A stretch of 64,000 nucleotides of DNA, taken from Botryllus schlosseri (taxonomy: Eukaryota). The notes below the pieces were generated by a model that saw only the letters and a program-made list of their open reading frames with translations, was not told where the DNA came from and did no database searches. Position numbers and translations under genes: made by a program. The first letter of the stretch is position 1, and each line of letters starts with the position of its first letter. The stretch lies in the NCBI GenBank assembly GCA_051294905.1, contig CM119371.1, forward strand, positions 31,558,001-31,622,000, written 5' to 3'. Of this stretch, positions 1 through 49,614 are shown piece by piece.

Positions 1-214
1 ACAAAGTGCAGTGAAATCGATATGGTCGAAAAATACCACAGTCTCGTAAATGTGATAGATAACGGGCATTGTATTGCTTGTGGTGGCAGAAATATCATAT
101 GAATGACGGTATGATCGTATGACGTCAAAATGAGTGATACTCGAATACTCGACTCGAAGCAAACTACTCGATTCAGAATAGAATCACTGAGGTGCTCGAT
201 TTTGCCCAGCCCTA
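1..214. mobile_element. Right end of a TAGGGCTGGGCAAA-family MITE (cut by the window edge)
   Basis: Colinear with 11750-11978; ends TTTGCCCAGCCCTA. Confidence 0.85.
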
Positions 215-3084: not shown

Positions 3085-3148
3085 CGCCTGTTTGTCGCAC
3101 TTTTTCTCAATCGGGATACTGGGCGTAGGCTCGTCGGTGCAGTAGAAC
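3085..3148 (-). CDS. LDLa-like exon (64 bp, ends phase 0); last exon traced
   Basis: tacag|..|gtatgt; (R)FYCTDEPTPSIPIEKKCDKQA. Confidence 0.85.
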
Positions 3149-12100: not shown

Positions 12101-15100
12101 ATAATATATTTGGCTTACCGGCAGGAAACTTCCTACGGACCGGCACCAGTCCACGGACCGGCAGTTGAGAACCACTGCACTAGAGCACTGGTGCTCGAAA
12201 TGGACACTGCATCAACAGCGGTGTTATAAGAACAAAATCAGTAATAGATTATTTATAAAAAACAAAGATATAACAATGATTATATACGGCAGCGTGACTC
12301 TCTTCAGTATGAGTCGGGTGTTGTTTTCTTTTTCTTTTTATCTCGGACCAATGCCCTAATCTGACTCAACAAACCCATAGTGTTCGTTTGAATCCAGGTC
12401 AAGAACCTCTGAATTAGATGTAAACTGATAGATATTTATTGGTTTGATGTAGCTATAGCATTCAATTGAGGAGACTTCTAAAAGTGAATGTATGGTATTT
12501 TGCAGGGCAGCCCACCTGCTATCGCAGACGCTTCTTGCGTTCACCAATAGTCTAGTTCCATTTCCCAAACTAGCGCATCGAATTGATGGTAGATTTGAAT
12601 TTCCGGTTGAGCTCGTATCTGAGACAGTCCACATCGATGAAATTGGCAGATAAATCGATAATATCCGTGAAAGTCACTTACCCCAGATTACATTTTCGCA
12701 AAGTTTTGGCCGAGCTACCGAAGAGCAGAGGCACTCGTCAGTGAGATCATGGCAGTCAAATACCCCGTCACATAGCTTTGAAATAGGTAGAACGAGAGAT
12801 GGTTCGGTCAGGCATTGGAAACATGTCTTGTCCGTGAGATCTTGGATATAAAGGGTACTTTATAAAAACATCAATAATTATAAAAGTAACGTTTTCCTCA
12901 CATTTTCCATCCCCGGGACAGAGGCACTCGTCAATAGCTGCAAGGTAAATCATCAATTGCAATTAAAGCTTTCTTATTTAGATTGTATTACATCATATTG
13001 TAAATATGCTGTGCAAATGGCATTAACCCCGAGATATCGCCATGTCCATCTTGAAGATATCATGATTATCAAGTTCACAGTATAACTATAAATTAGTAGC
13101 ATCGGTAATGTGACATCGAAAACTGTAGATATTGTATGATGCAACATAGCACTCACCCTGGTCACACAGCGAAACGCCGTTGCATATATCAGGTTTAGAT
13201 ATCATGCACTGCCGCTCTTTTCGATGACATATTCTTCCAGTAAAATCAGTCCTCTCCGGCCGGCTTAATTCATCGCTTCCATCTCTAAAATTTAGGAAGT
13301 GCTGTGATCTCGAATCATGAGTTGACTCGTGTCGCTGCCCACAAATGACTTGGCTTGGCTTGGCTCGGACCTGGCGCTTGATTAACATTACCTGTCGATA
13401 GTAGCTCATACTAAAACTCTGGAGTTTTGAAGCCGCTGAATATTATACTTCGAAAAACATTCTGAACGTCTCGGCTGTGCTGAGAAGTGACATACCATAC
13501 CATCAATAGTAATCCTGAATATATTAACGTATTCTACGTGAATAGTTCGATGAATATAGGCATCGCAGTCACTGTAGCTTAGGTATGGACAGGGTTGTAA
13601 CCAAGTCACAAGGCTCCGAGTCACAAGTCAATTTCACTTTTATAATTTTGACTCGAGTCAAGTCGAGTCATTTTCAACTCACCACCGAGTCAAGTCCGAG
13701 TCCAAGTCATCGATTAGAGGGTCGAGTCCGAGTCATGGTATTATGACTCGAATCGAGTCCAAGTCAATACGTTGACTGCTCAGTTCCCAGCTAAAATCTT
13801 GTTAAACTCACTTTCTATAACTCTGTTTGGTGATTTTGAATTGTTCGCATTTATAATATAGTGATTTTCCTCACTTTTAGCAGGCTCTGATCGCATTCTC
13901 ACGTGCTAGTACCAATAAACGAAATCCCAATAAGGTGGTTACTTTACTATTCTTCCAAATTACGATAAAATATCGGTCTTGGCCGTCTGCGTCTCGAGTC
14001 AAATGACTTGGTTCGAGTCATGCGCAATGACTCGAGTCCAAGTCGAGTCAATACACAAATTGACTCGAGTTGAGTCGAGTCATTTCCGAATTTTGAGAAA
14101 ATGACTCGAGTCTAGTCGAGTCATCAGAAAATCGTGACTCGAGTCTGACTCGAGTCGAGTCATGACTCGAGTCATTACAACCCTGGGTATGGATACCATA
14201 AATTCCGCCATATTAGCCCTCACCATGGCCATTAAAGTATCATTACAGCCACGCCAAGTTGTGTGAAACTAGCAGCTATATATTTATCGCCAGCTCAATC
14301 ATGGTAGGTGCTGATTCCACTAACGCTTGCCATCACCTTCATATTTCAATCGAAATATTTTATCATTCTTCCGGTCAATTCATGTCATACATGTAAATCA
14401 ACAATTAGTTCATTTTCATAAACTTTGAGTGAAGTTCAGAATTTCCATCATTAATCGCTCGAAATAGATATGCATTGACCAATTGGTTTCCGCGCAATTA
14501 CAGACATAGCATACTTTCGACTCACAACTCATATCGAGTCATTGCACATTTGACTCGTGTCATATGATTTCATTAGATTTTGAGATGACTCGAGTCAAGT
14601 CAAGTCAAACCAAGCATAATTTCGCGGTGTGCGGCATGATTCAAGACATTGCCTTTGATAAGATGGTTCATGTACAAATGAAGTCACTGTTTAACCTGAA
14701 TAAAATATCGAATAGAGGGTTTTTAACATCTTTCGTATTAGCTCCAATAACTGAGAGTGATTACATTTAGTCAATCGAAATTGACTTGAAATTGCAATCC
14801 AATATTTGATAAGAATCATCTGAATTGGGAAATTTTGAATGAGCAGTATGTTTATGAATAAATGCATGAAACAATTTATGCACGGAACCAGCATAATTTA
14901 TATCTGCTAGAACACCTATCCACCATTTTGGGAACCACACTGTTCATTTTCTTCCTGTAAACAGTCCAATATTCAAGTGTAATTGCTAAGGAAGTTGAAA
15001 GATGGAAATAGAATTGCAGCTGTAAAATACGTCCTCTTGTTACTTTTCTTGTCACATGTTAGCAGCATGAAAGTTTTTTTTTTTTTGAATACTCATTCGA

Positions 15101-18100
15101 ATTCCAAACCAGATCCTGCAGTGTTGATTTTATCTGGCATTGGATATATGAAATAGAACAGCTGCGTGTTACGTACCCGCAATCTCTAATTCCATTACAG
15201 TACTGGTTTCCCGGAATACATTTCCTCCCATTGGCGCAGGAAAATTCGTTCGCTTTACACGATCTGCCTGTAAATTAAGAAGAACCACAATGTGAAAATG
15301 GAATGTTTTTTTTTATTCTGTAGGTTAAAATTGAAGACAGGTATTCGGCATCCCGTCCAAACGTCATCAATATAATTCTCTCTCTTTTATTTTAGTCACG
15401 GTGACAATCCTTTCCCGCCAGATGAATATAACACTCGCCGGACTAAAACTGACTTTGGCCCACACTTACACTTATCCGACGGAATTTGGCGAGCTCATAA
15501 AACATACTCGACATTATAAATTTATTTAGACAAAGTAGGATACCAAATAGGGTTGAATTTAAAACAAACGGTGTTTAAAACATGTCAGTGTTTTAAACAT
15601 GAGCCTCTAAAAAAATTGTGTTTTTTTAAGTTGTGAAATTATGCCATATTTGTGTGAATAATTTTCGAAAAACATGTTGCATGAGCTTATACGAAGAATT
15701 ACCACCCGATATAGCTGTCGCATATCGACATCGGATGGTTGGAACCCTCAATATAGTCGGTTCAACAACAATAGTACATACATTTCGTAGCTATATTTAT
15801 CCTAAATTTTCAATTGTGAATATCAATCACTATCACATCACAATGGAATATTTGTGACGTTTTGACGTAAAAAACAGCATGAAAAACAATAAAAAACATG
15901 TTTCAAACATGTTTGTTTTATATTTATTTTTACATGTCACCCTAAGACCAACCATCCTCACCGTCGCATAATTCTTCCATGTACGGAACAAGGTTGGCTG
16001 GTAACTCGCATATCCGATATCGATAGTCATAATCAGGAGTCTTTCTGCGACATAATATTTCATTGACATCGATTCTTCTCCATTTCTTCCACGGTTCATC
16101 AGTTTCATCACTAGAAAAATAGAATTGGAATGCTCGAGTCTAATATTGCTGGTATTGTGGTAACAGGTCACCATGGCTCTTAAACAGACCTGGGCAAAGT
16201 GCGGCCTGCGGGCGAAATGCAGCCCGGGAAGCTATTCTGTGCGGCCCGCAAAAGGTTGCTTGGAATTTAAAACATGAAACTTGCTTTTTGAATGACTAAA
16301 ATCATAGGCTGTATCAAATGAGCAGGAAAATCGTTTACTTTAAAGTCTGTTCAATAATATGCCACGATTACGCTGCCTATACGTATACCCGGCGTACGTA
16401 GTCCATATTCAATATAAAGGCAATGTGGAAAAGTATGAGTAGCAATTGAAGTCACGAGAAATCACTTTTCCATATATAGTTTAGTTCAAACCTTCCTTGT
16501 TGGCATTGTCACATTACGCATTATACGGTATGTGTTTCAACTTGTTACGTCATACGTTTCCAAATCCCTAACTCGTAAAACAAGTCAATCAGTTCTCGTG
16601 ATATCTATAAGACTATCATCAATGAAGAATTAACGGCAAGCAAATAAGAAAGCCGAAACTGAAATTCAAAGAAGGTCTGGGTTTACAATTTAAAGCACTG
16701 AATATTCGTATACTGGAGTCAGGAGTAAACCCGTCCTTTCGGTTTTTGCCGAGCATTAAGGATTAAGATTAAGGATTCTAATTAAAGTCGGTCTTACGTA
16801 CTCGGTCAAAGGAGGTCAAAGTTCTGAAAAAAATGCAAGCTTCGCACAACATAGGGGCTATTTAAGCTGCACACTGCTCGACGGGCAGTGACCAATAAAA
16901 CAACTTTTGTACTATTGTATATACATATCAGTGCAGTGACTGGGAGACGTGAAAGCATCAGAAGGATGCCACGAAGCCGAAGTGTATTGAAAAATTTATC
17001 GGCCTTCGCGCGATATACCCCCAGCTTATAGTTGTTGCTCTGTTTATGGTCCGACTTGGATATTTCAGAATTCTCTCATCAACAGCCATAATCTTCTAAG
17101 TCATCTAATTACCCGTGGGGAATGCTAGCATTCTGGTTGCAATTTTTATTATTTTGAGATATGATGATACGGAGGCACGAAATTGTTCACTATCACAAAG
17201 GAAGACGTGCCTAAAAAGTTTGAGGACGACTGTTTTATAGTCTTAATAGAAGAACGTCTATAGGGGTTTAAAGAAAGTTAAAATGTATCATGTTTACCAT
17301 TGTTTCCAATCATGAAGGCAAATAGATGTATTTTTAATTAACCGTCACTTTCTCATTATCTAATATCAACACATTCACTGAGAAGCATTTATTAACAATG
17401 CATTTTAGAAATAAAATTAAAATACGCTGTAGAATATAGCCAACATTTTTCACTCGGCCCGCCAACCCATTCAGTATTTTTTTGCCCCGCGGAGGAAAAC
17501 AATTACCCACCCCTGCTCTTAACCATTAGTAATCCGTAGAACACTTACGTTAATCAGCAAGCCTTCTCGGAACCCCGAAAATCTATACATTACTACTATA
17601 GATTGCTGTTGCGAAAAATGAGCAATACACAGCAACAGAGTGTTTTAAGGGGCACTGCGCCCTATAAATGACGTGGTCTCAAATTGAAGCACAAATCGAA
17701 ATCAAATTTTGGCCGCAGCCATTTGCTTCCGAAATCCACCGTAATGGAATTAAATGCAATTAAATGAATTTTGGATAAACCCCAACTGACGCGGCTGCGC
17801 GTCATCGTTTCTTAACCCGTTGCGAAATTTCTGGTGCGATATCTTCACCGCCGAACTTGCTCGACGAGAGTTTTCTCAGCATGAATGCACGCGATTTTCG
17901 CACTTAATGATATGACATAAATATATATGTAAATCCGTAGTAGATTACGGCAACTGCAATATTATGCGAATCGGACTAGTGATGATTAGGGCAAGTTTTT
18001 GTTGCAGTCAAATCTGTGGAAAGTTGCATTTATTTTTCGCAAAAGTTGCAGTTAAAAGTTGCATATATTGACAATAGTAGCAGAAAAAAGTTGTATTTAT

Positions 18101-21100
18101 GGACAAATTTCCTTGAAATCATTAGAGTATGAGATACTCGAATCGATCCGGATCCAAGGCACTGTAGCAAACTTCGGTGTTGGCGACTTCAACAAAGTCA
18201 ATAGGCTGAAACAATTGACCCAGTGAACATATAATTTTCGTCGGTCTAGCCTGAATGTACGTCATATCAGAAAGGACCTCAAATTTAAAGGACGATGAAA
18301 TAATCAAGCAATCTATTTCGATATAGTGCCAAGTATTTCCAGTAAAAAGTTGATCAAAATCGAAGAAAAAGATGCATGAAAAATCTGATGCATGGAAAAA
18401 ATGGAGAGTAATTGAAAAAGCTGCAATATAATATTCTCCCAAACAGCTTAAAACACCCTACTACATACCTTCCGAGTATTTAGGGAGCTGCCGGAAGCAG
18501 TACAAAAATGTTGCAAAAGTTGCGAAAACTTGGCCCTAGTGATGATAGTAGAAGTGAGTGTATGTGTGATTCAAATTTGGTTTAATACGCTATGGGGGTT
18601 CCGAGACCAGTGTGTGTTATTTCTGTGACAATTCTGTTTCGGCTACGCAATTTATCACTATCAAATGATATATCGTACTCGCAGTCATGGCCACCGTCAC
18701 AATAGTCGTCCTTTCGTACACATCTTGACCCGGCGTCGCATGAGAATTCGTACCACAGACACGCTGAACCTAAAGAAAATATGCAACTAGTGATTTCATG
18801 AATTAAAATAATCTAAAATTTAACTTTCGGTTACAGTCGCACCTTCATGACATATGCGCGACGGAATTATTTAAAGTTCATAAAGTATGAGAGAGCGAGT
18901 GAACGAGATAGAAATTTACTGAGTGAAAGAGATTGTTTTGTTAATCGTCGATGCCGCTTATTCTGCATGGTGCGTACTGGGAGATCTTGGTACGGATTCA
19001 ACAGATTCGGATAGGTATGCAATATTCTTAGGAACCGTCATTAACCTTGGCTTGCAGCCGTCAAAGTGAATGAGTTAAAGAACATTTGTTGGTTAATTAC
19101 ATGCTACGATATGCGCAGGTTCTTTTAGATTGCAACCATAATAATATTCGTTTGGCGTGTGGCATTTGTAGTATTATCAAATCAGACAGCTGCAAACCCA
19201 TATTATAGACATCTTTGGCATGTATATATTTGGTACAGAGAAAGCATTTTGCCGTCATGGTTTGTCATTTAACTCAATGGTAAGAATGTCGATTATTGTT
19301 TAGATTGCGTACCAACTAAAATACACAGTGGCATCAACACTACACAGAATAAGATATCTTGGCAGAAGTTTGTATATGTTCTACGTCTTTTACATATTTG
19401 TCATATATGATTCGTAACTCTTATGCATAAGTCTTATTCTTGTTTTACAATATTTTCATAATATTACTGTCACTGCTGTAATCTGCAGCGTATAGTACAA
19501 AGTGATTATCTATCATTAGTGATTTGTCCTTTATATATGTTGATTGGGCGTCGCCTCTTACTTTAGTTAGTTTGCTGTATGTACATTGTCAGTTACGCTG
19601 TGTTATGTGTGGTCGCTAGTCACTAACATATGTTTTCATCGCACAGGCTTGTCTCAATCTATCTCTAACCGCAGGCGACCACTATTTTAAATCCTAATTT
19701 CACAACCCAGTTTCATTTGCTGTATTTTTACATTTCTTTGTTACATCGTTTCTCGCAACACATATGATCTCTACCTTCATCAACTGATCATCACTTGTCT
19801 CAATCGGTCGTGAAATTTGAGTCAGTTCCAAATGTTGTGTCAATAACTGTCCTATAGCAAAGAGCAGTTACAACTACATATCTAATATGCATTGTCGAAA
19901 TCAGTGGTTCTCAACCGGGGGTCGGCGAAGCATTTTCAGGGGGTCTGCGAGACCTCTAAATTTGATAAATGATCGATAACCTAACTTAATTTTTCTAAAT
20001 CGGGGAAATCACGAGGAAGCTGTGCTTCATAACTGCTGAAACTTCCGGATTTACGCCAACAGAATTTTTACTTGATATGAAATATCCCACTGCACATATG
20101 CGTGTTTTAATTTTCAATTTGCCAATAGGCAATAGGCATATTGCCGTTTAGAAATGTTTTAATAGGGCTTTTGCAACGGGTAAATTTTTAAAGTGAGGTC
20201 CGTAATCATATTGACTTGGAAATGTTTGCAAAACATTTAGGATTTCAGGTTGTCAGTCTCAGCAAATTAGTGAAGAGTCGTTTAAAAATGACATCTCGTC
20301 ACGAAATACATTTTGTCGCTTGGTGCCATATATGCTCGCATACCGAAAGGTGTCGTCGGAAGCGTGACGCGTAATTATATTACATCCGCTAACTCATCTT
20401 TTTATCAAATCGAGGTCACGGATTTTCAAGACAACACCACGTATTTCAAGAAATGCAGCTGCAGACTTATTGCTCTGAAATGATAAAAGTGTACCTAATT
20501 TCTACATCTATCTCAATTATATAGTATAGTGTTGTTTTCAGGACAAATCATTTTGTTGGTGTTTATCACTATAGCCTACAGTTAATATTTCCACAAGATG
20601 ACTGTTGCATGATCATTGAGATAAATTTGTATTAAAACTAGAGGGGGGCCGCGGAGTCCGTGACGGCCCAAAAGGGGTCCGCGAAGACAAAAAGGAAGAG
20701 AACCACTGGTATAAATCATATAAACATACAGTTATATTACATCCTCATATATTCCACTGCTGCCATTACCTTCGCAAGATTCGTAAAGATTTACCGGCGT
20801 TCCTTCAGCCAACACACAAACGCGCGAATCTCTCCAATTCACCTTACGACAGAAGCTGACATTGGCACTGTACTCCACATTGCCGTTGAAATATCGCTCA
20901 TCCGAACGGTCACTGTACAAAAATTCCACTTTTTACTTGGCCCATGTACTATATAAATCAAACTAAAAATTTGGAGTGAACGCAAGGTTGGATATGGCTA
21001 CAGCATTAGCAAATGATAGAGGTAGGCCTATTCCAAGAGGTCCGAATGTACGTACGGACAGTCAGGGTCCGAGTCACAAAAATAACGATTCGGAAGGCAC

Positions 21101-24100
21101 GCCGTCCCATCGATACAAGGAAATTCATCATGTTGACAAGTTGATCCTGGAAACATGAATAGGTTGTAGTAATCATGTAATGGGTTGGATAGGAACCTCT
21201 ACCAAATCCATTAAAATTCTCAGAAATGGTTTGACTGCGGGAGAGACTTGACATATTGCTATCAGTTATGCTCAGTTGTTGATGAAGTCTTCAATAAATA
21301 TCGCACCAGGTTGAACTATTCTTCCAGATTATGTTTTATTGCAGTAATTAGAATATTACAGCGATTTTGCTTTTTAATCAAAAAAATACACCTTCACATG
21401 TTAGGACATTGCCTGATTACAACCTATAGGCTTACAGTGCCCGGTTTTAATGCATAGGCATCACTTAACGACTGAGATTGTTGTATAAACTCATCTATGG
21501 GACCAGTGTATCACCAAAACAAAATGTAATTTTGAGAGTCGCACCTATTTGAAGTACCATTAGTTTATATTTGATATACCATTAAATTTGCATCTTGAAA
21601 TAATTCTAGATAGAAGATCTGCTCAAAACACACATTGTAGAATGCAATGTACGGCATTGTTCCATCACATTTATTAATTTGTGTGCTGGGTATCAAAACT
21701 GATTGGTTTGATTACCTCATTTTGCTTTACATGCTGGAAGTGAAAATCGGGTACTCAGGTTATTGGCAATCTCTGACACAAACTTTAGCTTTTACGAAAT
21801 TCCAGTTGGTGCAATCCACCGAAATAATCATATTCGTGCGAGGATATTTCTAAAAGGTCTGTAGAACGTTGTCAATTCGTATACCACCTATTGGGGTGTT
21901 AATACCAACCATTTTCACTAATAATGCAAGCGATGTATCAACTGATAACATAAAGGAAGTAAGAATCCGGCACCCATACCCGCACAAATCTTGTCTGCAT
22001 ACGGTACGTGGTTCGGTGGCAGCACGCAAACAACAGTATATAGACTAAATCTAGGACGTTCGTGACTCCGACAGAAAGTGACATCAAGGCCATAACTTTC
22101 GGAGCTATTCCTCTCTGAAGGCTCATCAGATCCATCCCTATAAGAAACTGCACTGATGTTTTAAGCTCATTACTCAGGTTACTCCAGTTTCTATAATATA
22201 GGAATATGTGAGGGTCGGTTACCTGTGAATCATTTCGGATTAAAGATTTGAAAATGAATTTGCAATTGTACAATGTACAGGTGTCATGGAAGGCTTGAGT
22301 GGTTTTCTAACTATGCGCGGGCGCGAAATATTATAAGAGCGGGGGAACCATTTAAAGGCTAATGACGCATTCTGAAACTATAAGCTCAGCTTCAAAGTGT
22401 TCCACAAAGGCAATGATAATAATGAATATTTATTTTGATATTTTTGCGCCGTACCGTCTACATCAGTGCTTTTCAACCTGTGTGACGGTTCCCACTCTTG
22501 CGAATGAAAAAAATTGCTGTGCGAATGACGAAGGTGGTGCGAATGGTTAGAATGAAAATCCGGATCAAGTGCGAATGAAAATCGTGATTAATGGTTAATT
22601 TTTCTGACGTGGAATAATTCAAATAAGCATAATAAGAAAGTTAGGGCCAGTGTAACTTTTTCAGTTGCGACGCTATTGTAAAAACTTAACACGACGCACC
22701 ATTGATCGTAGCTCTCACAAGCTGTAGTGAATTATTATTTTCGAACTATAATTATTACGTAACCAAAAGCCTGGTTTGGAAGCTGGTGTAGTGGCAGACA
22801 TGCAGTATATCAGCCTGTCTGAGCTTGCGACAGGCTGGAAAAATGACGTCAAATTGACTTTCTGCTTTCTTTCGCTGAACTATCATCATACTTTCGTAGA
22901 AAATGTTCGATTAGCGCGAGACACAAGGATAGTAGTAAATACCATCATTACAGACCCACATTTGCAAGTTATTGTAATGCAAATTTTTACCCCGTCAACG
23001 ATTATTAAGTATGGACCGCAAAGGGACCGATTTTGAGTCGACACGGTGCCAGAGCTATCTGTTAATATGTATGTAATGTCTATTGAATTTATTGCAAAAA
23101 ATCCTGAGATAGTTTTTACATATCCAAGCTCACTGTTTCGGGCACTGTAGCCAATAAGCGAGACACGCAGAAAATGTGACTTTATCATCAGAATTCATAA
23201 TAAGATTTGCGCTACAGTTTTTATTTTCTGGAAAGCGCGGCCTAAGACGGTTGGGATGAACTAATGTAGGGGTGCGCAACGAGCGAATTCAGGCCCATGA
23301 GACTCATTCATTTCGAGGTCAACTCCTTCTGCTTCGGGGCACATGAAGACGTAAAGTTTGGGCAAACATACATCTGATAAAATGCAGTGCCAAAAACTTA
23401 AGCGGCGACAAAACCTTGGTCTAAAAATGACCGATGCTGGATGGCCAACCCTTTCGAGATGGATTGTATATGCGCCGTTGTCGGCACGGAATAGTCCCGT
23501 TCTTGCAATCTGAGTAGACAGTAGTACAACTGCGATATACGCTGAGGAATTTAATTCACCCTGATTTGAAATCGCGTGCGTCAGACATGTTTTGTAGAGC
23601 CATGTTTGGTAGAATTGTGGTGTGCGCGTTCTGTATGTCATACATGCTCGTAAAATCGTAGGATGCAACTATGTAATATCAAAAATGAATTACTTTTCAT
23701 GGGTGAGGCTCGGGTCGCAAGATGCCACAAAAACTCTGATTTTGGTTGTAGTGTGAAAGCTGCTTCACCGGTAATAAACTGTTATGAATTCTCAAGTTAG
23801 ATTGAGCTAAAGAGTAGAGCACACAGTAATGTGAGTTCATTTGCTCTTCTCATGAACTCGCGAGACAGAAGTTAGAGCAACGTATCATAAGGTAGCGAGC
23901 TCTAATTTGCCTACTCTTCTTGATCGCTTTGCACCTTATGTTCCAACACATAAGGCAAAGGCATAAACACAAACATGTGGGTTTTTCATCAAACCGGAGC
24001 GTCCGGTACCTTTGTGTCAGCTCGCAAAAATGATTTCTGCCAGCAAGCATTTTTCACCCGCGAAAAATACGCTGCAGTTTGGATAGAAGTGCAGAACATA

Positions 24101-39100: not shown

Positions 39101-42100
39101 AATTCCCGCACATATCGCGCTCTCGATCGTGCAAGTTGTGTACTGACGTATACCACGAGACGACTAGTAACTTCCTACATAATAACTGATATCCTATTTG
39201 TGATAGTCGACGTTTCGGTCAGTTTCGGAAACTACCGGCACGCTCGTCTCAATCTTAAGACGCAAATTACACTGGTCTACAAATTTCGAGAAAAAATTTG
39301 CGCCACAAATTTTAATGATTGATTTAGGCCAATTTAAGGTCGCTGAATCCGATTTTGTGCTCCGAATTTCTCTATCACGTCAGATTTATTCGCTACGTAT
39401 TTTTCTGATTTTCATAAATTACTCAAATTTCGGCATCCGTTAATGATTTTACGTTGAGCGCACAACTGCAACAGATCAAACATTGTTATTCAACTAATCT
39501 ATAATAATGAAACCTGGGTAGTTGTAGAACAGAATAATTGAGTTTTCCGTGAACTTGAAACAAGCGGTTTTCTATCTTCATTCAATAAGGAACTCTTTTC
39601 GACACATTAATTCATATGGGGATGCAACTACTTTTATTCGGAAGCTGTTATCATCTTTATATACCACTCTTCATTTAGTAGCTCCGGACTTAATTTAGTT
39701 CCCATAGGACATTCTGTGGCCCACACCAAAAATCTTGTTTTCTATGCTTGAACAAAGCCAGCGATGAGCATTAGTTAATTTTTAGTGATGTTTTTATATG
39801 GTTTCGAGGCTTTCTGTTAGTATTTTGCATGATTATACGCCAGTTCTAATACGCAAAGCTTTATATTTTTGACGGTTTCTGATTTGCCGTAATATTTTAC
39901 TATGAACTAGAGTTGATCGAAGTGATCGGCGTTGCTACTCAAATAACGCCTTACATCTCTACTCAATTACAAGTAGAAGTAGTAATTTCCAAGACATGTA
40001 AACACTACTTCGAGGGGAAGACGAAATGAAAGGTCTGAGAATTACTAAAAGTAATTAAATATTTGGTCGGGGATAGGGTGGCCGCATACTTTCAATCGTT
40101 AGTCAGAAATGGCCACATACGAAATCGCAAGACGTATCATCTCGGCTAACGCGATATGTCTATAATGACCCTATAACCATTGGTAGAATCTAGGAAAATA
40201 TATTCAGTTACCGTGCTTTAGGGGCTGTGCCACGCAGTTATAATGATCATGTAACTCATGAGAGTGGTGCCGTGTCTTCTGTAATACCAGTCGATATTCG
40301 CTGCGCGCAACCAATACTTAACCGACGTCCTGCAAATGTACTATCGGGCGATGTACTCACTGACAGTTCTTTATCCCATCGCAAAAGAAAGACTTCGGCA
40401 CGCACTGCGATCCATCCGCACACGGAAATTCGTGGTATCTACACGCCGAACCTGGATAGATATACACAATCTTGACAAGTAGCCTACTCGACCAGCAACA
40501 TTCTACGGTGTTGCATGCAGGGTTGCATTTGCGACTACAGGTATTTTAAAATCTGTGTTTAAAACATGTTTTAGACAATGTTTGAAACAAGGCCTTTTTT
40601 AAAAAAAGTTGTGTTTCTTTAAAGTTGTAAAATTATGCCATAATTGTGAAATACTTTAAAAAAAACATTTTGTATGTGCCTACAGACGATTACCACTTGA
40701 TAAAGCCGACGTATACGACTAGGGTTGTGTTTAAAACCAAAATCAATTTAAAACACACATGTTTAAAACATGGCCCTTGTTTAAAACATGTTTTTTATTG
40801 TTTTTCTCTACCCATGATATCCTAATGATGACGAATACCTTCTAAAATGACGATACAGTGATTCCTGCGACTGCACAGCATGAAATGCTCGAAGAAAATT
40901 CTTGTATTCAACGAATATTTTATTGAAAAAAATTACTGAGTGGCTTCCACGGCACACTGAGCAGCATAGAGCAACAACTGCTTTACTTTTACGACATCAT
41001 CGTCAATATTGTCCATAAATAAGTCATCCTGCATCATAGACGGAGTTATGAAATCGTCCCGCCCTTCAAGTCGACTGAATATACCATTTACACGACTCAA
41101 AAGAGTCGTAGGGTATGTATCATCATCGTCACTTTCGCTGGGTACTTCCTCGGCTTCGCTGATTTCATCGATAACCTTCTCAGATTCTTCTTCCTCCGCA
41201 AGTATTCTATTAAACTTCCTTAATAAGTCTTTCGATTTCTGGCAGTCAGACTTTCCAAGCGAATGGTGACTTTTAATCTTCAGAATCATTTCTAGACTTC
41301 CGCAACTTAGCCTATTTCTTGACTCGGTAACGGTGGCTGCTGCTGCTGACCATAGTCGTTCACACGAGGCCGCGTGCGGTGAGCATGATAGTAAGGTCTT
41401 GGCTAACATAGAAATGTCCGGTGCATCGTCATGTACGTCACTCGAAAATATCATGGGATTTTCTGTAATGCATGGTGCCCAAACTGAGCTGTCTCCATGA
41501 AAGACACCTGTTTTCATATCATAGGCCATCCATTGCTTGACAAATTCGTGAGAAGTCGATCGCAAAGGATACAAATCCTTGAATAGTTGAAGCGCAAGGT
41601 CTCTTATCTTTCGCCTCCCTGACTGATTTAAGCCGCATCCCCGCGCTCTTGGATCCAAAATCCACGACACGAATTGGTGTGGCTCAATGTAATTGGCTGT
41701 CCTTCGTTTCATTTTGTCAAGCAATGAATCCTTCTCATTGGACTGCAAAAACGCACTGGATGATATACAACTCTTCAACCAAGTCCAACTTGTCAAAATG
41801 AGCCCTGCGGATGCATAGGCCTAATCCATTTCCGACAGGCCCGTGATTACGCGGTATGGTTTGAGCAGTTTGTATATTTCTTGTGTGTTTCGCCAGAACG
41901 ATTCATCATTAATTACTGATTTCACACAGGTGGCGCTTTTACTTTGTAAGTACGGCTTTCCTCGGTCCTCAACAAAGAAAACTTGAATTGTGGCTTGTAT
42001 GTTGAGAACATGTTCCAGCGAGGTCGCAAAGGAGTACCACCTTGACTCGGTAGGCAGCCACATCGGGATGGTTTCTCGTCCGTAATATTTGCACAAAGCG

Positions 42101-48100: not shown

Positions 48101-48689
48101 CTTTTAGCAGTTTTCGGTCGCATTTTCAAGTACCAGTACCATTAGACGAAATCCCAATAGTGTGGTTACTTTACTTACTTTTATTTCTCTTCGAAATTAC
48201 AATGAAATGTCGGTCTTGGCCGTCTGAGTCTCGAGTCATATGACTTGGTTCGAGTCATGCGCAATGACTCGAGTCCAAGTCGAGTCAATACACAGATTGA
48301 CTCGAGTCGAGTCATTTCGGTATTTTGAGAAAATGACTCGAGTCAAGTCGAGTCATCAGAAAATCGAGTCATGACTCGAGTCATTACAACCCTGGATCGC
48401 GAACCTCAAAACTACAGGAACAGGTACATGCGGACTGCTGTGTAGTTGAATTCACATTGTAGCATCGTGTTACAGGCTGCACTATACAAAGCCATGGTGT
48501 AATTAAATATACGTAACCATATCGTGTTAACACGATTCGGAGGCACTTTCCATGTGAATATTGCTATCCGAATGCACACCGCAAGCTGTAACGCATACCT
48601 GCAATCAGTTATTCCATCGCAAAATTTCTGCGTCGGTATACACATTGTCTGGTCCGTGCATGCAAATTGGTTGCCTGGACACGTCAAAC
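3085..48689 (-). CDS. Multi-exon gene (30 exons traced, ~1,120 aa, incomplete at both ends): LDLa-repeat-rich secreted or cell-surface protein, probably the ectodomain of a GRL101-like LDLa receptor
   Basis: Thirty exons with GT/AG boundaries join in compatible phases with no stop codon (3,362 nt). They encode 11 LDLa/DGSDE units plus C-terminal LDLa-like modules. No start codon, signal peptide, TM segment or stop codon was securely found in the window. Confidence 0.9.
4107..4214 (-). CDS. LDLa-like exon (108 bp)
   Basis: caaag|..|gtgaat; CKHVESGERYILPVDVLCDGTITCEDQADERGCGA. Confidence 0.88.
6124..6643 (+). mobile_element. 5'-truncated retroposon fragment with (AAT)n tail
   Basis: Flanked by a 10-bp TSD taattgcgaa (6114-6123 and 6644-6653). 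Confidence 0.68.
6760..7161 (-). mobile_element. tRNA-derived SINE
   Basis: Box A TGGCGCAGTGTG and box B GGTTCGAGCC on the minus strand; 14-bp TSD atcccgtctggaat; related fragment at ~8680-8820. Confidence 0.8.
8102..8249 (-). CDS. LDLa-like exon (148 bp)
   Basis: tttag|..|gtgagt; ATACDGIPECNDFMDEECRCDTLPEFCGFIYQYDYDWRGTSVDGIIST. Confidence 0.85.
8318..8386 (-). CDS. 69-bp exon
   Basis: tttag|..|gtgagt; PSGSPFRGHKKLDYKCGDPDGK. Confidence 0.8.
10674..10720 (-). CDS. 47-bp exon completing an LDLa acidic motif
   Basis: ctcag|..|gtatgt; LDCPDGEDEAYCTGK. Confidence 0.88.
11128..12177. mobile_element. hAT (Buster-type) MITE hosting the 11541-11978 MITE
   Basis: CAATGGTTCTCAAC..GTTGAGAACCACTG; TSD tgctagag/cactagag (6/8). 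Confidence 0.75.
11541..11978. mobile_element. hAT MITE (TAGGGCTGGGCAAA family), nested
   Basis: TIR TAGGGCTGGGCAAA; perfect TSD attacgac. Confidence 0.92.
12516..12618 (-). CDS. LDLa-like exon (103 bp)
   Basis: ctcag|..|gtgggc; TSSTGNSNLPSIRCASLGNGTRLLVNARSVCDS. Confidence 0.82.
12682..12840 (-). CDS. LDLa-like exon (159 bp)
   Basis: ccaag|..|gtaagt; LTDKTCFQCLTEPSLVLPISKLCDGVFDCHDLTDECLCSSVARPKLCENVIW. Confidence 0.88.
12902..12937 (-). CDS. 36-bp micro-exon (phase 1-1)
   Basis: tgcag|..|gtgagg; IDECLCPGDGK, completing CNGVSLCDQAIDECLC. Confidence 0.82.
13157..13284 (-). CDS. Exon B11 (128 bp), transition into the C-terminal LDLa-like region
   Basis: tttag|..|gtgagt; DGSDELSRPERTDFTGRICHRKERQCMISKPDICNGVSLCDQ. 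Confidence 0.9.
13590..14185 (+). mobile_element. hAT MITE (CAGGGTTGTAA family, GACTCGAGTC-rich)
   Basis: TIR CAGGGTTGTAA; perfect TSD ggtatgga. Confidence 0.92.
15177..15267 (-). CDS. Exon A11 (91 bp), LDLa half
   Basis: tacag|..|gtacgt; RSCKANEFSCANGRKCIPGNQYCNGIRDC. Confidence 0.92.
15548..15944 (+). mobile_element. TAGGGTTG-family hAT MITE
   Basis: TAGGGTTG..CACCCTA ends; TSD ataccaaa/agaccaac (6/8); aaaacatgtttt-type subterminal repeats. Confidence 0.82.
15962..16110 (-). CDS. Exon B10 (149 bp)
   Basis: tctag|..|gtgagg; DETDEPWKKWRRIDVNEILCRRKTPDYDYRYRICELPANLVPYMEELCD. Confidence 0.9.
16185..17515 (+). mobile_element. Non-autonomous hAT element (1,331 bp)
   Basis: CAGACCTGGGCAA..TTACCCACCCCTG; TSD ctcttaaa/ctcttaac; gcggccc subterminal motifs. 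Confidence 0.8.
17649..17900 (+). mobile_element. TTAA-flanked GGGGCACTG-ended repeat (Kolobok-like?); inverted copy at ~1400-1660
   Basis: ttaa|ggggcactgc start; reverse complement matches 1520-1660; only one end seen in each copy. Confidence 0.45.
17987..18538. mobile_element. hAT MITE (TAGGGC family)
   Basis: TAGGGCAAGTTTT..AAAACTTGGCCCTA; perfect TSD gtgatgat. Confidence 0.88.
18679..18769 (-). CDS. Exon A10 (91 bp), LDLa half
   Basis: tttag|..|gtacga; SACLWYEFSCDAGSRCVRKDDYCDGGHDC. Confidence 0.92.
19902..20708. mobile_element. hAT (Buster-type) MITE
   Basis: CAGTGGTTCTC..GAGAACCACTG; TSD gtcgaaat/gtataaat (6/8). Confidence 0.75.
20770..20912 (-). CDS. Exon B9 (143 bp)
   Basis: tacag|..|gtaatg; DRSDERYFNGNVEYSANVSFCRKVNWRDSRVCVLAEGTPVNLYESCE. 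Confidence 0.9.
21056..21146 (-). CDS. Exon A9 (91 bp), LDLa half
   Basis: tccag|..|gtacgt; STCQHDEFPCIDGTACLPNRYFCDSDPDC. Confidence 0.92.
21980..22137 (-). CDS. Exon B8 (158 bp)
   Basis: tatag|..|gtatgg; DGSDEPSERNSSESYGLDVTFCRSHERPRFSLYTVVCVLPPNHVPYADKICA. Confidence 0.9.
22464..24399. mobile_element. Internally deleted hAT (Buster/Charlie-type) element (1,936 bp)
   Basis: TIR CAGTGCTTTTCAACCT; perfect TSD gtctacat; faint transposase remnant (DEKPTCL) on the minus strand near 23900-24050. Confidence 0.88.
24801..25522. mobile_element. hAT MITE (722 bp), 31 bp from the exon A8 donor
   Basis: CAGGGCCGGCCAACCT..AGGTTGGCCAGCCCTG; perfect TSD atctacac. Confidence 0.9.
25554..25644 (-). CDS. 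Exon A8 (91 bp), LDLa half
   Basis: tctag|..|gtgcgt; SSCSTSEFPCDDGTQCVSGHVYCNRQAEC. Confidence 0.92.
25763..26183 (+). mobile_element. TAGGGTTG-family hAT MITE
   Basis: Colinear with the other copies; right TIR AAATGCAACCCTA; TSD poorly preserved. Confidence 0.8.
27642..27781 (-). CDS. Exon B7 (140 bp; follows a 70-nt intron)
   Basis: ttaag|..|gtgaga; DGSDEPPLKKSNISYDHDTMFCRGRSGPFICVLPPRLVSQHELICT. Confidence 0.9.
27852..27942 (-). CDS. Exon A7 (91 bp), LDLa half
   Basis: caaag|..|gtaagt; ASCKDDEFPCFDGAKCIPVSSFCDGTPDC. Confidence 0.92.
28230..28752. mobile_element. GACTTGACT-rich MITE remnant (CAGTGTTGGGATC-type end); related fragments at ~4830-4910, 14500-14610, 26420-26560 and 27500
   Basis: Ends GATCCCAACACCG; many gacttgact/gagtc motifs; no clear TSD. 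Confidence 0.55.
29466..29617 (-). CDS. Exon B6 (152 bp)
   Basis: tgaag|..|gtgaga; DGSDEPPLRNYSVSYSRYDNFCRGKDRSKNGRFICLLPSRLSSQSGQLCA. Confidence 0.9.
29845..30095. mobile_element. hAT (Buster-type) MITE
   Basis: CAGTGGTTCTCAAA..TTTGAGAACCACTG; TSD tgttagaa/tgttataa. Confidence 0.85.
30688..30778 (-). CDS. Exon A6 (91 bp), LDLa half
   Basis: tacag|..|gtatgc; SSCTSDEFSCSDGSRCIHNSLFCNGDRDC. Confidence 0.92.
30962..31154. mobile_element. hAT MITE (193 bp)
   Basis: TIR CAATGTTCCCTCTAA; perfect TSD atcacaag. Confidence 0.9.
31264..31424 (-). CDS. Exon B5 (161 bp)
   Basis: tatag|..|gtagca; DGSDEPPLRNSSKDFAPNVTFCRQRAHRYDDLRVRSICELPPHLSTLQEDICE. Confidence 0.9.
31821..32500 (+). mobile_element. 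tRNA-derived SINE (second family) interrupted by a MITE
   Basis: TAGCGTAATGG box A, GGTTCGATCG box B; resumes after 32391 and ends aataaa followed by a cctt-rich tail. Confidence 0.68.
32063..32391. mobile_element. hAT MITE (TAGGGTTACCATA family) inserted into a SINE
   Basis: TAGGATTACCATA..TATGGTAACCCTA; TSD tggtatgc/tgctatgc. Confidence 0.85.
32944..33034 (-). CDS. Exon A5 (91 bp), LDLa half
   Basis: tccag|..|gtatgt; PICTKTEFSCDDGSTCIRQENFCNGKNDC. Confidence 0.92.
33351..33666. mobile_element. hAT (Buster-type) MITE, degenerate right end
   Basis: CAGTGGTTCTCAACC left end; flanks tactagaa/tactagag. Confidence 0.6.
34241..34386 (-). CDS. Exon B4 (146 bp; weak acceptor, possible alternative donor at 34211)
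   Basis: gtaag|..|gtgagc; DGSDELYRNNSIVTGDSFTTCRGKGQYRDTTGRICMVTSAAAEILLCE. Confidence 0.85.
34710..34800 (-). CDS. Exon A4 (91 bp), LDLa half
   Basis: catag|..|gtgcgt; STCNLWEFSCMDGSQCLPNDMFCDGIVQC. Confidence 0.92.
35140..35392 (+). mobile_element. tRNA-derived SINE with (AAAC)n tail
   Basis: TAGCGCAGTGG box A, GGCTCGAGTCC box B; TSD aactcRctgactag. Confidence 0.82.
35747..35919 (-). CDS. Exon B3 (173 bp)
   Basis: ttcag|..|gtgagc; DKSDEPPLRYNNITYDPSIRFCTGRGYATYIPEVEMLIKWICVLEPSLQPYENELCS. Confidence 0.9.
36062..36493 (+). mobile_element. TAGGGTTG-family hAT MITE
   Basis: Colinear with the other copies; TSD acgctatg/actctctg (6/8). Confidence 0.82.
36998..37088 (-). CDS. Exon A3 (91 bp), LDLa half
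   Basis: cgcag|..|gtagaa; KQCSKYSFACLDGSGCVRNEEFCDGKADC. Confidence 0.9.
37442..37860. mobile_element. hAT MITE (TAGGGTTACCATA family)
   Basis: Similar to the 32063 copy (gtcct repeats); TSD acaggtat/gcaggtgt (6/8). Confidence 0.75.
38669..38799 (-). CDS. Exon B2 (131 bp)
   Basis: tttag|..|gtatga; DGSDEVYRDRGSSNYSDVIICRKETRFCEVTTQFLRDKKAFCE. Confidence 0.9.
38983..39100 (+). mobile_element. SINE head, same family as 35140
   Basis: gagatagcgtatagtggcataa..gggttgcgggttcgagtccg. Confidence 0.7.
40361..40451 (-). CDS. Exon A2 (91 bp), LDLa half
   Basis: tccag|..|gtgagt; SACRYHEFPCADGSQCVPKSFFCDGIKNC. Confidence 0.92.
40720..43623 (-). mobile_element. hAT DNA transposon (2,904 bp) with decayed full-length transposase, nested in a MITE of its own family
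   Basis: TIRs TAGGGTTG...GCAACCCTA; perfect 8-bp TSD tatacgac (40712-40719 and 43624-43631); ends match the TAGGGTTG MITE family in reverse orientation. Confidence 0.92.
40933..43041 (-). pseudogene. hAT transposase pseudogene (BED finger, DDE core, C-terminal dimerisation domain)
   Basis: BED-like W..AKCNYC..HTREC; LTMVSDSWT; CLAHQSNLL; TESRWYS; SPHAASCERLWS..SRNRLS. Frameshifts near 42690, 42300 and 42150, and an in-frame TAG at ~41822. Confidence 0.9.
44190..45768 (-). mobile_element. Internally deleted hAT (Buster-type) element (1,579 bp)
   Basis: CAGGGGTCGGCAACCT..AGGTTGCCGACCCTTG; perfect TSD ctctaatt; remnant VRSLSRAAMLTRVYDLRNETATFLE resembles Buster VRWLSRG..LR.EI..FL. Confidence 0.85.
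45957..46102 (-). CDS. Exon B1 (146 bp, phase 2-1), DGSDE + 3-Cys module
   Basis: cacag|..G|gtaagt; DGSDEPYWTVNSNYSDYTTICRRGKDSFTPRLCILPSQLRAQQDELCD. Confidence 0.92.
46196..47370 (-). mobile_element. Second, older Chapaev3-like transposase remnant
   Basis: SLKIVVFHNGNTYSPVSIGHS (46929-47177) and MSIKVHFL..HLDIFP..QGERFHQDI (~46500-46700); inverted subterminal motif g(c/g)ctgatt(c/a)cgaatat near 46220 and 47330. Boundaries approximate. Confidence 0.6.
47816..48394 (+). mobile_element. hAT MITE (CAGGGTTGTAA family), same orientation as the 13590 copy
   Basis: TIR CAGGGTTGTAA; TSD gatcgtga/gatcgcga (7/8); highly similar to 13590-14185. Confidence 0.92.
48599..48689 (-). CDS. Exon A1 (91 bp, phase 1-2), LDLa half
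   Basis: tacag|G..AG|gtatgc; LTCPGNQFACTDQTMCIPTQKFCDGITDC. Confidence 0.92.
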
Positions 48690-49614
48690 CTGTATCGATT
48701 TGATTGAAATGCTTACCATGATAATTTCGGTAAATCACACGAATATATGCAAGAAATAATTGATACCTAACCTTCAATGCAGATGATTAATACCATGGCC
48801 GCAGTTCCAATGTAAACATGAAGCATCCTCCATTTTAACATTGAGCTTTTGATGTTTCGTGCTGGTGTCATTGATGCCTTAGATCACGGGTCGCTGACTT
48901 AAAAGTGGTCGTATGACACGTTCCAAATTTCGTAGTAGCTGCGGGTCACAAGACCGCAATATCGACACGCGATAGGCACCACTTTTATGTCAGTACAACA
49001 CCGTGCTCTCTCATATGACGGTGACGGGCATAGTTACCACAAAAGAAGAGATATTTTATCAAGGAAATACGACTACAACAAAAAATATCATGATCATCAC
49101 TTTTGTTTTATTTTGAACTATGAGCTGCGCCCGATACTCGAAAACGCTTTACGGAAACTAGGGAATCGATATTCGGAATAGTGAGGCACGATGCTAGCTG
49201 AAATACTATCTCATTGAATGCTTGATCTTGTGGGGATGCCCTAACCAGTTTTCAAGCATTTCGAATTTGGAACTGTCTGGGCCATTAAACACCAAGGCAA
49301 TGTGCCCAATCATATCAGCTGATTATCCCTTGATGGAATGCTGTTGCCACCCCCGAAGTCGTTTCAGCTAGTGAGGAATAGTGATGTTGGGCACAGGAGA
49401 ATAGCTCATTTTGAATACAACAGCAACAGCAACAACAACAATATTTTGAAAATAAAATCAATTTCAGCATTTCAAAATGCTTTACTTAACGTGTTTTCGA
49501 AATTTGAAATCAGATCGCGGGCGGTGAAATAATACATTGTGGGTCGCATGCGGCCCGGGGACCGAGTGTTAGTGACCTCTGCTTTAGATATCGAAAATAA
49601 CTAGCTCTTATAAC

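What the first reader, a model, noticed from the sequence alone, without database searches (positions are those of the whole stretch)
13157..48689. Tandem array of 11 exon pairs encoding an apparently undescribed 8-Cys extended LDLa module
Seen in sequence: each unit is a 91-bp exon (C-x6-C-x5-C-x6-C-x5-C, five LDLa cysteines) plus an exon starting D[GKRE][ST]DE. Canonical LDLa has a sixth Cys 2-3 residues after DGSDE and pairs C1-C3, C2-C5, C4-C6 (established). Here that Cys is missing in every unit. Instead, in units 1-10, three Cys follow as DE-x14-16-C-x6-19-C-x13-C-x-[G/S/D]; the x13 spacing holds in 9 of 10 (x11 in B4). Inference: the orphan LDLa C4 pairs with one of the new Cys, giving a larger 4-disulfide, Ca2+-binding fold repeated 10 times. 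I do not recognise the 3-Cys extension as a named domain.
Basis: partly seen in the sequence, partly recalled or inferred. Interest (0 to 1): 0.85.

Follow-up and report, generated by a model that had tools for sequence, protein, structure and literature searches.

The report
Stapled one-and-a-half LDLa repeats, sea squirt
The array is real and transcribed, but its "new" 3-cysteine extension is a decayed second LDL-receptor-type repeat fused to the first, a building block found only in the outer part of a sea-squirt receptor family known since 2008.

Summary
Observation confirmed. On the minus strand, 11 exon pairs (a 91-nt A exon plus a 128-173-nt B exon) all have AG/GT borders and splice into one open frame. 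An RNA-derived contig joins A3-B3-A4-B4 exactly at the predicted borders.

A exons are LDLa C1-C5. B exons start D-x-[ST]-D-E, lack canonical C6 and carry three more Cys.

No Pfam family or solved structure matches the extension. It is still not a foreign domain. Profile-profile comparison and intermediate forms in Ciona, Phallusia, Clavelina and Styela show it is a degenerate second LDLa. That second repeat has lost C1', C4', C6' and its calcium cage, so new C6=C2', C7=C3' and C8=C5'.

Canonical pairing then gives C6-C8. It leaves orphan C4 to pair with C7, an inter-half staple. AlphaFold2 folds the unit confidently (pLDDT 88), and structural alignments put C7 where canonical C6 sits.

The unit is confined to tunicate proteins. 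Many of these are LDLa-repeat rhodopsin-type GPCRs, the "LDLRR-GPCRs" of Kamesh 2008, which treated the repeats as ordinary LDL-A.

The window holds the ectodomain, collinear with a Styela GPCR. No 7TM exon lies inside it.

Verdict: a new variant of a known kind, of moderate interest.

The parts
48772..48841 (-). Putative first coding exon (ATG plus hydrophobic signal-like peptide, phase-1 donor)
   Evidence: Inferred only. It is the best hydrophobic ATG-to-GT candidate, 82 nt upstream of A1. Homologues P0005, P0001 and P0014 start with a signal peptide directly before unit 1.
48599..48689 (-). A1, 91-nt exon, LDLa C1-C5
45957..46102 (-). B1: DGSDE plus 3-Cys extension (x15, x11, x13)
40361..40451 (-). 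A2
38669..38799 (-). B2 (x15, x6, x13)
36998..37088 (-). A3
   Evidence: lies in the spliced X3 contig
35747..35919 (-). B3 (x16, x19, x13)
   Evidence: lies in the spliced X3 contig
34710..34800 (-). A4
   Evidence: lies in the spliced X3 contig
34241..34386 (-). B4 (x15, x13, x11)
   Evidence: lies in the spliced X3 contig
32944..33034 (-). A5 (corrected borders)
31264..31424 (-). B5 (x16, x15, x13)
30688..30778 (-). A6
29466..29617 (-). B6 (x16, x12, x13)
27852..27942 (-). A7
27642..27781 (-). B7 (x16, x8, x13); only a 70-nt intron after A7
25554..25644 (-). A8
21980..22137 (-). B8 (x16, x14, x13)
21056..21146 (-). A9
20770..20912 (-). B9 (x15, x10, x13)
18679..18769 (-). A10
15962..16110 (-). 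B10 (x14, x13, x13)
15177..15267 (-). A11
13157..13284 (-). B11: the 'twin' form (x13, x6, x7). C8 is followed by N-G-x3-C, so the second LDLa half keeps its C-terminal lobe.
12682..12840 (-). Next exon. It finishes unit 11 (D-L-T-D-K-x-C, which is C6') and encodes the conserved C-F-Q-C...C-D-G-x-F-D-C-x-D-L-[ST]-D-E-C module.
   Evidence: AG/GT and phase. Matched by 23 of the 26 tunicate family proteins tested, from Ciona, Phallusia, Clavelina and Styela; most of them carry 7tm_1. Weak Pfam LDLa hit.
10684..10719 (-). Fragment of an LDLa-like C-lobe (D-C-P-D-G-E-D-E-x-x-C); exon borders not determined
   Evidence: weak tblastn matches to P0022 and P0027
8140..8256 (-). LDLa-like module collinear with Styela GPCR P0021 residues 538-583; borders approximate
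4106..4219 (-). Reduced LDLa-like module; borders approximate
   Evidence: weak Pfam LDLa hit at profile 17-37; weak match to P0021 612-650
3106..3150 (-). Possible last juxtamembrane 'R-F-Y-C' module; weak
   Evidence: E 2.4 only; position collinear with P0021

Best explanation
The window carries the 5' and ectodomain part of a sea-squirt gene of the tunicate LDLa-repeat receptor family.

Gene layout. After a probable signal peptide come ten tandem 8-cysteine units. These are followed by one 10-cysteine 'twin' unit and several reduced LDLa-like modules.

What each 8-Cys unit is. It is one and a half LDLa repeats.
- The first half is a normal calcium-binding LDLa. It has C1-C5 and the D-x-S-D-E cage, and has lost C6.
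- The second half is a decayed LDLa. It has lost C1', C4', C6' and its acidic cage.
- What remains of the second half is a beta-hairpin and a helix with three Cys, plus a usually conserved N-glycosylation sequon.
- The mapping is C6=C2', C7=C3' and C8=C5'.

Predicted disulfides. By homology to canonical LDLa these are C1-C3, C2-C5 and C6-C8. The two orphans, C4 and C7, form a new staple that locks the halves together.

Inferred function. This would give a stiff, glycosylated string of ten calcium cages spaced about 75-85 residues apart. It would presumably bind basic ligands as LDL-receptor repeats do. In the full-length receptor it would present them to a relaxin-receptor-like 7TM domain that would lie beyond the left edge of the window.

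Shown versus inferred.
- Shown: exon structure, splicing of A3-B3-A4-B4, homology of the extension to LDLa, tunicate restriction, confident fold prediction.
- Inferred: disulfide map, calcium binding, ligand binding, presence of a 7TM.
For: Exons and frame.

Splicing: X3 contig A3-B3-A4-B4. Full-length transcripts of relatives have the same unit order (P0005 with start and stop, P0014).

A exons are Ldl_recept_a.

The extension derives from LDLa:
- hhalign of the twin-form extension against 250 canonical LDLa gives probability 94.7, E 6e-8. It aligns C7 to C3, the next Cys to C4 and the one after to C5.
- hhalign of the 8-Cys extension against the twin-form extension gives probability 95.3, E 2.4e-8. 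It aligns C6 to C6, C7 to C7 and C8 to C5'.
- Pfam LDLa hits twin second halves from profile position 11-17 to 37, three below and one just above the gathering score.
- Intermediates keep x13 spacing but retain G-F-K-C ... C-V-L-P-x4-[G/F/N]-D-D-x2-[DE]-C-x-D-x-S-D-x-C.

Fold: AF2 single unit pLDDT 88.3, pTM 0.74. Two units give pLDDT 82.2 with the same secondary structure twice.

The staple: complete single LDLa chains align to the model with their last residue at model 62-65 (C7 is residue 63). None ends at C8, residue 77. Examples are 8ua8_R at 4..63, 3a7q_B at 4..62 and 7fff_D at 2..62.

Cage conservation: D-x-[ST]-D-E in 11 of 11 units; D or N after C4 in 11 of 11.

Family:
- P0021, P0032, P0044, P0053, P0056 and others combine such units with Pfam 7tm_1.
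- Window exons are collinear with the P0021 ectodomain.
- The family was described in PMC2396169.

Specificity:
- 70 extended against 39 canonical units in 27 tunicate proteins, versus 5 spurious against 1432 canonical in 116 other LDLa proteins.
- Only 19 hits to the B-exon profile in 1.84 billion proteins. The credible ones whose source species is named are Styela clava; the rest are unnamed transcript or genomic contigs with the same module.
Against: - No atomic coordinates were available, so no S-S distance was measured. The disulfide map is indirect.
- The direct profile comparison of the 8-Cys extension with canonical LDLa is not significant (probability 0.8; B versus A exons). Homology rests on intermediates.
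- Only 2 of 5 AF2 models of the two-unit construct were confident.
- No 7TM exon is present in the window.
- One relative, P0005, is a complete secreted protein without a 7TM, so the receptor assignment of this particular gene is open.
- Two bulk RNA-seq runs showed no reads on the exons at the sampled depth. Transcript evidence for this gene is therefore a single contig.
Confidence: 0.7

Rival explanations
1. One reading: the 3-Cys extension is an independent, previously unknown domain unrelated to LDLa, grafted after a C6-less LDLa.
For: No Pfam hit on the ten B exons scanned. No PDB sequence or fold match beyond residue about 40 of the unit. Direct hhalign to LDLa is insignificant.
Against: Transitive homology at probability 95 in both steps. 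Intermediates retain the F-x-C, C-V-L-P and D-C-x-D-x-S-D-x-C LDLa motifs at the same spacings. Pfam LDLa hits the twin form. The E-to-C6 spacing of 14-16 equals the canonical distance from E to C2 of the next repeat.
Confidence: 0.1
2. Same unit, different wiring: C8 is a displaced canonical C6 (C4-C8), and C6-C7 closes the variable loop of an insertion.
For: The C8-x4-C1 linker equals the canonical C6-to-C1 linker. The C6-C7 loop varies from 6 to 21 residues, as disulfide-closed loops often do.
Against: C8 aligns to C5', not C6', in profiles and intermediates. Structural alignments place the end of canonical LDLa at model residues 62-65 (C7), never at 77. The co-loss of C4' and C6' fits canonical pairing in the second half.
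Confidence: 0.2
3. The gene encodes a secreted multi-repeat glycoprotein with no 7TM, like P0005, rather than a GPCR.
For: P0005 is a complete 715-aa ORF with signal peptide and stop, 7 units plus the same C-F-Q-C module, and no TM. P0001 of Styela has 13 units and no 7tm_1. There is no 7TM ORF in window 1-3200.
Against: Window exons continue collinearly with GPCR P0021 to about its residue 650-690, just before TM1. P0005 ends about 85 residues after the C-F-Q-C module. Most family members found carry 7tm_1.
Confidence: 0.3
4. Artefact: ordinary 6-Cys LDLa repeats whose C6 lies in a missed micro-exon, or a decaying pseudogene.
For: None found.
Against: An RNA contig joins A to B directly at the predicted borders. 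Transcripts and RefSeq models of relatives show the same 8-Cys units. The frame stays open over 22 exons with invariant Cys.
Confidence: 0.02

Closest known systems
LDL-receptor class A repeat (LDLa, complement-type repeat; Pfam PF00057)
   Same: The first half of every unit has the C1-C5 spacing, the F-x-C and C-[IV]-P motifs and the D-x-S-D-E calcium cage. It superposes on solved LDLa modules at about 1 A over 34 residues. The second half is a remote derivative. Phase-1 introns bound the unit, as for classical LDLa exons.
   Different: C6 is missing. The second half lacks C1', C4', C6' and the acidic cage. The unit has 8 Cys in 70-84 residues with a predicted inter-half disulfide. An extra phase-2 intron sits just before D-G-S-D-E.
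Ciona 'LDLRR-GPCR' family (Kamesh, Aradhyam and Manoj 2008, PMC2396169)
   Same: Tunicate lineage-specific proteins with 1-10 N-terminal LDL-A repeats, no LRR and a relaxin/INSL3-receptor-like rhodopsin 7TM. Ciona, Phallusia, Clavelina and Styela members carry the twin and 8-Cys units and the C-F-Q-C module found in the window.
   Different: The paper describes the repeats as typical six-cysteine LDL-A and does not mention the missing C6 or the extension. The window shows no 7TM. Its array of 10 units of the 8-Cys form is at the long end; comparable arrays were seen only in P0001 of Styela (13) and the unnamed transcript P0014 (9).
Relaxin-family receptors RXFP1/RXFP2 (LGR7/8) and snail GRL101
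   Same: Rhodopsin-type GPCRs with N-terminal LDLa module(s). The tunicate family's 7TM clusters with them according to PMC2396169.
   Different: They have canonical 6-Cys LDLa (one in RXFP1/2, about 12 in GRL101) followed by LRRs. No LRR is detected in tunicate relatives.
Styela clava uncharacterized proteins LOC120346100 (P0021), LOC120342772 (P0001) and LOC120327042 (P0032)
   Same: The same 8-Cys unit (x21, x8-9, x13), a terminal twin unit and the C-F-Q-C module. P0021 and P0032 add 7tm_1.
   Different: Only 30-48% identical to the window's exons. Unit numbers differ. All are unannotated.

Membership tests
LDLa (PF00057) | Significant match to the curated family profile | tested here: met
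   All 11 A exons match, best E 1.1e-8. The one tabulated covers profile positions 2-28 of 37. Homologue units match 2-34/35.
LDLa (PF00057) | Six cysteines, with C6 two to three residues after D-x-S-D-E | tested here: not met
   No Cys for 13-16 residues after DE in any of the 11 units.
LDLa (PF00057) | Acidic calcium cage (D/N after C4, D before C5, D-x-S-D-E) | tested here: met
   D-x-[ST]-D-E in 11 of 11; D or N after C4 in 11 of 11; D before C5 in 8 of 11. Calcium binding itself was not tested.
LDLa (PF00057) | Disulfides C1-C3, C2-C5, C4-C6 | not testable with these tools
   No model coordinates are returned. Indirect evidence puts C7 at the C6 position.
Second, degenerate LDLa (for the extension) | Detectable homology of the extension to LDLa | tested here: inconclusive
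   Direct comparison is not significant. It is significant through the twin form (probabilities 95.3 and 94.7), with mostly sub-threshold Pfam hits and motif-retaining intermediates.
Tunicate LDLRR-GPCR (PMC2396169) | Tandem N-terminal LDL-A-type repeats without LRR | tested here: met
   No LRR in relatives. LRR exons in the window were not searched for exhaustively.
Tunicate LDLRR-GPCR (PMC2396169) | Rhodopsin-type 7TM, relaxin-receptor-like | not testable with these tools
   No 7TM ORF or tblastn hit in window 1-13000. It would lie beyond the left edge.
Tunicate LDLRR-GPCR (PMC2396169) | Ectodomain collinear with confirmed members | tested here: met
   Exon 12840-12682 is matched by 23 of the 26 tunicate family proteins tested, most of them with 7tm_1. 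Further exons are collinear with P0021.
LGR type C (RXFP1/2, GRL101) | LRR block between LDLa and 7TM | tested here: not met
   Pfam finds only Ldl_recept_a and 7tm_1 in P0021, P0022 and P0027. None was seen in window ORFs.

The most novel reading that the evidence does not exclude
The 8-Cys unit is a structurally new, disulfide-swapped LDLa derivative. Two adjacent repeats each lost the cysteine facing the other (C6 and C1'). Their orphaned partners (C4 and C3') formed an inter-repeat staple. The second repeat then decayed into a glycosylated hairpin-helix spacer. This would turn the normally floppy beads-on-a-string LDLa array into a semi-rigid rod that serves as the ligand-capturing arm of orphan tunicate GPCRs.
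Probability: 0.55. Interest if true: 0.55.

Novelty: new variant of a known kind. Interest (0 to 1): 0.5.

Why it matters
LDLa repeats are among the best studied extracellular modules, and their six-cysteine, three-disulfide pattern is treated as invariant.

Here a whole animal subphylum uses a derived form. Two repeats appear to be welded together by a swapped disulfide, and one of them is hollowed out. All evolutionary intermediates are still present in living species, which makes this a clean natural example of how a new cysteine-rich module arises from an old one.

There are practical consequences too:
- Domain databases annotate only the first 34 residues of each 75-85-residue unit and miss the second half. 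Tunicate LDLa-GPCR ectodomains are therefore under-annotated, and repeat counts such as "1-10 LDL-A" are incomplete.
- The family is still orphan. Knowing the true unit boundaries is needed to design expression constructs for ligand fishing.

Tried and rejected
- Pfam on the ten B exons of units 1-10: one chance hit only (DUF7495, E 0.059).
- hhalign of B exons against A exons: nothing.
- Foldseek and VIA-align against the PDB, a PDB profile search and the ESM Atlas shape search: only the LDLa core matches.
- AFDB clusters: one uncharacterised 208-aa protein (F6V7E5) covers the whole unit, TM 0.66. Its sequence could not be fetched.
- ESM Atlas feature search: generic LDLa clusters only.
- I looked for model coordinates to measure S-S distances; none are exposed.
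- I looked for a 7TM in window 1-3200 and by tblastn with three GPCR relatives; none found.
- Bulk RNA runs X9 and X13 gave no exon coverage, only intronic repeats.
- The window's own annotated protein was not found in the protein collections. Structure prediction therefore used units of homologues (P0005 with a 31-unit alignment), not the window's spliced sequence, which has no reference.
- Literature searches for a description of the aberrant module found only the 2008 Ciona GPCR paper, which does not mention it.
- The idea that C8 is a displaced C6 was considered first and demoted.
Full report
**1. The observation**

Scanning all six frames for the LDLa cysteine spacing finds matches only on the minus strand. 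There are eleven regular ones between 48689 and 15177, plus a degenerate one at 13229. Each is followed downstream by an ORF beginning D-[GKRE]-[ST]-D-E.

Reading the borders shows a strict pattern.
- A exons are 91 nt, preceded by AG in phase 1 and followed by GT in phase 2.
- B exons are 128-173 nt, entered in phase 2 and left in phase 1 just after the third extra Cys.
- My first coordinates for A5 were 3 nt off; the correct exon is 33034-32944.

Joined, the 22 exons give an uninterrupted frame.

- DE-x14-16-C, C-x6-19-C, and C-x13-C in nine of ten units (x11 in unit 4).
- A four-residue linker to the next C1.
- D-x-[ST]-D-E is kept in 11 of 11 units.
- Nine of the ten extended units carry an N-x-S/T sequon in the extension.

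Unit 11 is different, with spacings x13, x6 and x7.

A plausible signal-peptide exon lies at 48841-48772. This is inference only.

**2. Transcription**

A 741-nt contig of run X3 lies on 37088-36998, 35919-35746, 34799-34710 and 34386-34241. The two of its joints that are listed are CT..AC on the plus strand, which is GT..AG on the minus strand. That is A3-B3-A4-B4 at exactly the predicted borders. The contig has 240 further nt upstream, outside the stretch.

Two bulk RNA-seq runs sampled at 6% and 13% had no reads on the exons. Expression is therefore low or tissue-restricted there.

**3. Known families**

All A exons match Pfam Ldl_recept_a (the one tabulated at profile positions 2-28 of 37). 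The ten B exons scanned (units 1-10) match nothing.

A profile of the ten B exons was searched against 1.84 billion representative proteins. It found 19 hits and only 3 below 1e-10. The credible ones are:
- Two Styela clava 'uncharacterized' proteins.
- Two transcript-derived proteins from unnamed runs (P0005 and P0014).
- Short ORFs that are B-exon equivalents on other unnamed genomic contigs.

In these proteins the same unit recurs 2-13 times with the same spacings. It also shows a conserved C-[LV]-L-P motif after C7.

P0005 sits on a 2316-nt contig as a complete ORF with start and stop. The A-B unit order is therefore confirmed in mRNA of a relative.

**4. Fold**

A unit of P0005 was folded with a 31-unit alignment. 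It gives mean pLDDT 88.3 and pTM 0.74. The model shows the LDLa hairpin and turns, then a second beta-hairpin whose first strand ends at C6 and whose second starts at C7, then a ten-residue helix ending at C8.

A two-unit construct repeats this pattern at pLDDT 82.2, although only two of five models were confident.

Structure searches match only the LDLa core, at about 1 A over 34 residues:
- Foldseek and VIA-align against the PDB.
- A profile search of PDB sequences.
- The ESM Atlas.

One uncharacterised AFDB protein covers the whole unit, at TM 0.66.

**5. What the extension is**

Searching with P0005 and P0021 brought in many tunicate proteins that combine LDLa with Pfam 7tm_1. They come from Styela, Clavelina, Phallusia and Ciona.

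A second unit type appears in them. It is again C1-C5 without C6. It is then followed by C-x~10-C-[FL]-L-P-x4-C-D-G-x3-C-x5-D-E-C, which is a second LDLa that lacks only its first cysteine. Window unit 11 together with exon 12840-12682 is of this 'twin' type.

Profile-profile comparison gives:
- Twin extension versus 250 canonical LDLa repeats: probability 94.7, E 6e-8. C7 lies on C3 and the following Cys on C4 and C5.
- 8-Cys extension versus twin extension: probability 95.3, E 2.4e-8. C6 lies on C6, C7 on C7 and C8 on C5'.
- 8-Cys extension versus canonical LDLa directly: not significant.

Pfam's own LDLa model hits twin second halves from profile position 11-17 to 37; three of the four tested fall below the gathering score and one just above it.

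Intermediates in Phallusia and Styela keep the x13 spacing. They still read G-F-K-C ... C-V-L-P-x4-[G/F/N]-D-D-x2-[DE]-C-x-D-x-S-D-x-C. These are the F-x-C2, C3-x-P and D-C5-x-D-x-S-D motifs with C4' replaced.

The E-to-C6 distance of 14-16 residues equals the canonical distance from E through C6, the linker and C1' to C2'. This last point is my calculation from the established LDLa consensus.

Hence C6=C2', C7=C3' and C8=C5'. The second repeat has lost C1', the pair C4'/C6' and the calcium cage.

**6. Disulfides (inferred)**

Keeping canonical pairs gives C1-C3, C2-C5 and C6-C8 (that is, C2'-C5'). The leftovers are C4, which lost C6, and C7, which lost C1'. They should pair with each other.

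Independent support comes from structural alignment. When complete single LDLa chains are aligned to the model, several place their last residue, the C6 position, at model residues 62-65. C7 is residue 63. Examples are 8ua8_R at 4..63, 3a7q_B at 4..62, 7fff_D at 2..62 and 8yw0_E at 2..65. No single-module chain reaches C8 at residue 77.

No coordinates were available, so this remains indirect. I put about 0.75 on the C4-C7 and C6-C8 wiring.

**7. Gene family**

Kamesh et al. 2008 (PMC2396169) described a Ciona lineage-specific 'LDLRR-GPCR' group. Its members have 1-10 N-terminal LDL-A repeats, no LRR and a relaxin/INSL3-receptor-like 7TM. The paper treats the repeats as typical six-Cys modules. 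No other paper in the library uses the term.

Several lines tie the window's gene to this family:
- Exon 12840-12682 is matched by 23 of the 26 tunicate family proteins tested, most of which carry 7tm_1.
- Further exons are collinear with Styela GPCR P0021 up to about residue 650-690, just before its TM1.
- No 7TM ORF lies in 1-3200. A 7TM, if present, is beyond the window.

Secreted relatives without a 7TM also exist (P0005), so I leave 0.3 on a secreted product.

**8. Specificity**

A regular expression for 'LDLa without C6 followed by three Cys' was run over all fetched proteins.
- In 27 tunicate proteins it finds 70 such units against 39 canonical ones.
- In 116 non-tunicate LDLa proteins it finds 5 chance matches, with unrelated spacings, against 1432 canonical ones.

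**9. Verdict**

It is wrong in treating the extension as unrelated to known domains and the gene as unplaced.

This is a new, tunicate-specific variant of the LDLa repeat inside a family known since 2008. It is interesting mainly as a case of module evolution by disulfide swapping, and as a correction to how these orphan receptors' ectodomains are annotated.

Noticed in passing
window 51184-52005 (-): A 274-aa open reading frame lies about 2.4 kb upstream of the putative first exon. It has no Pfam hit and its relation to the LDLa gene is unknown. It could be a separate gene or a transposon remnant.
   Followed up: partly
window 61791-62696 (-): A 302-aa ORF with a reverse-transcriptase domain (RVT_1, E 2.6e-15), likely a non-LTR retrotransposon fragment.
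   Followed up: partly
window 31797-32400, 33190-33590, 36000-36570: Intronic stretches show enormous summed contig depth in runs X1 and X3, and thousands of partly matching RNA reads with many fixed differences and loose ends. They are dispersed, transcribed repeats inside the introns of the array.
   Followed up: no
window 49318-49485 (-): An ORF containing a run of eight Cys codons, which looks like a trinucleotide repeat, lies between the putative signal exon and the upstream ORF.
   Followed up: no
window 3106-4219, 8140-8256, 10684-10719 (-): Reduced LDLa-like modules that lack the C1-C3 pair (R-F-Y-C ... C-D/N-G-x3-D-C-x5-D-E-x-C type). They are shared with the juxtamembrane region of tunicate LDLa-GPCRs and are a second non-canonical LDLa derivative in the same gene. 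Pfam scores them only weakly.
   Followed up: partly
window 32759-33166: An X3 contig of 409 nt covers A5 with its flanking intron sequence contiguously. It has 16 differences and one indel. It is either unspliced RNA or DNA from a divergent allele, or a paralogue.
   Followed up: no
P0027, P0049, P0056, P0064 (relatives, not the window): Intermediate units have lost C4' but keep C6'. This gives an odd cysteine count, and how that Cys is satisfied is unexplained.
   Followed up: no
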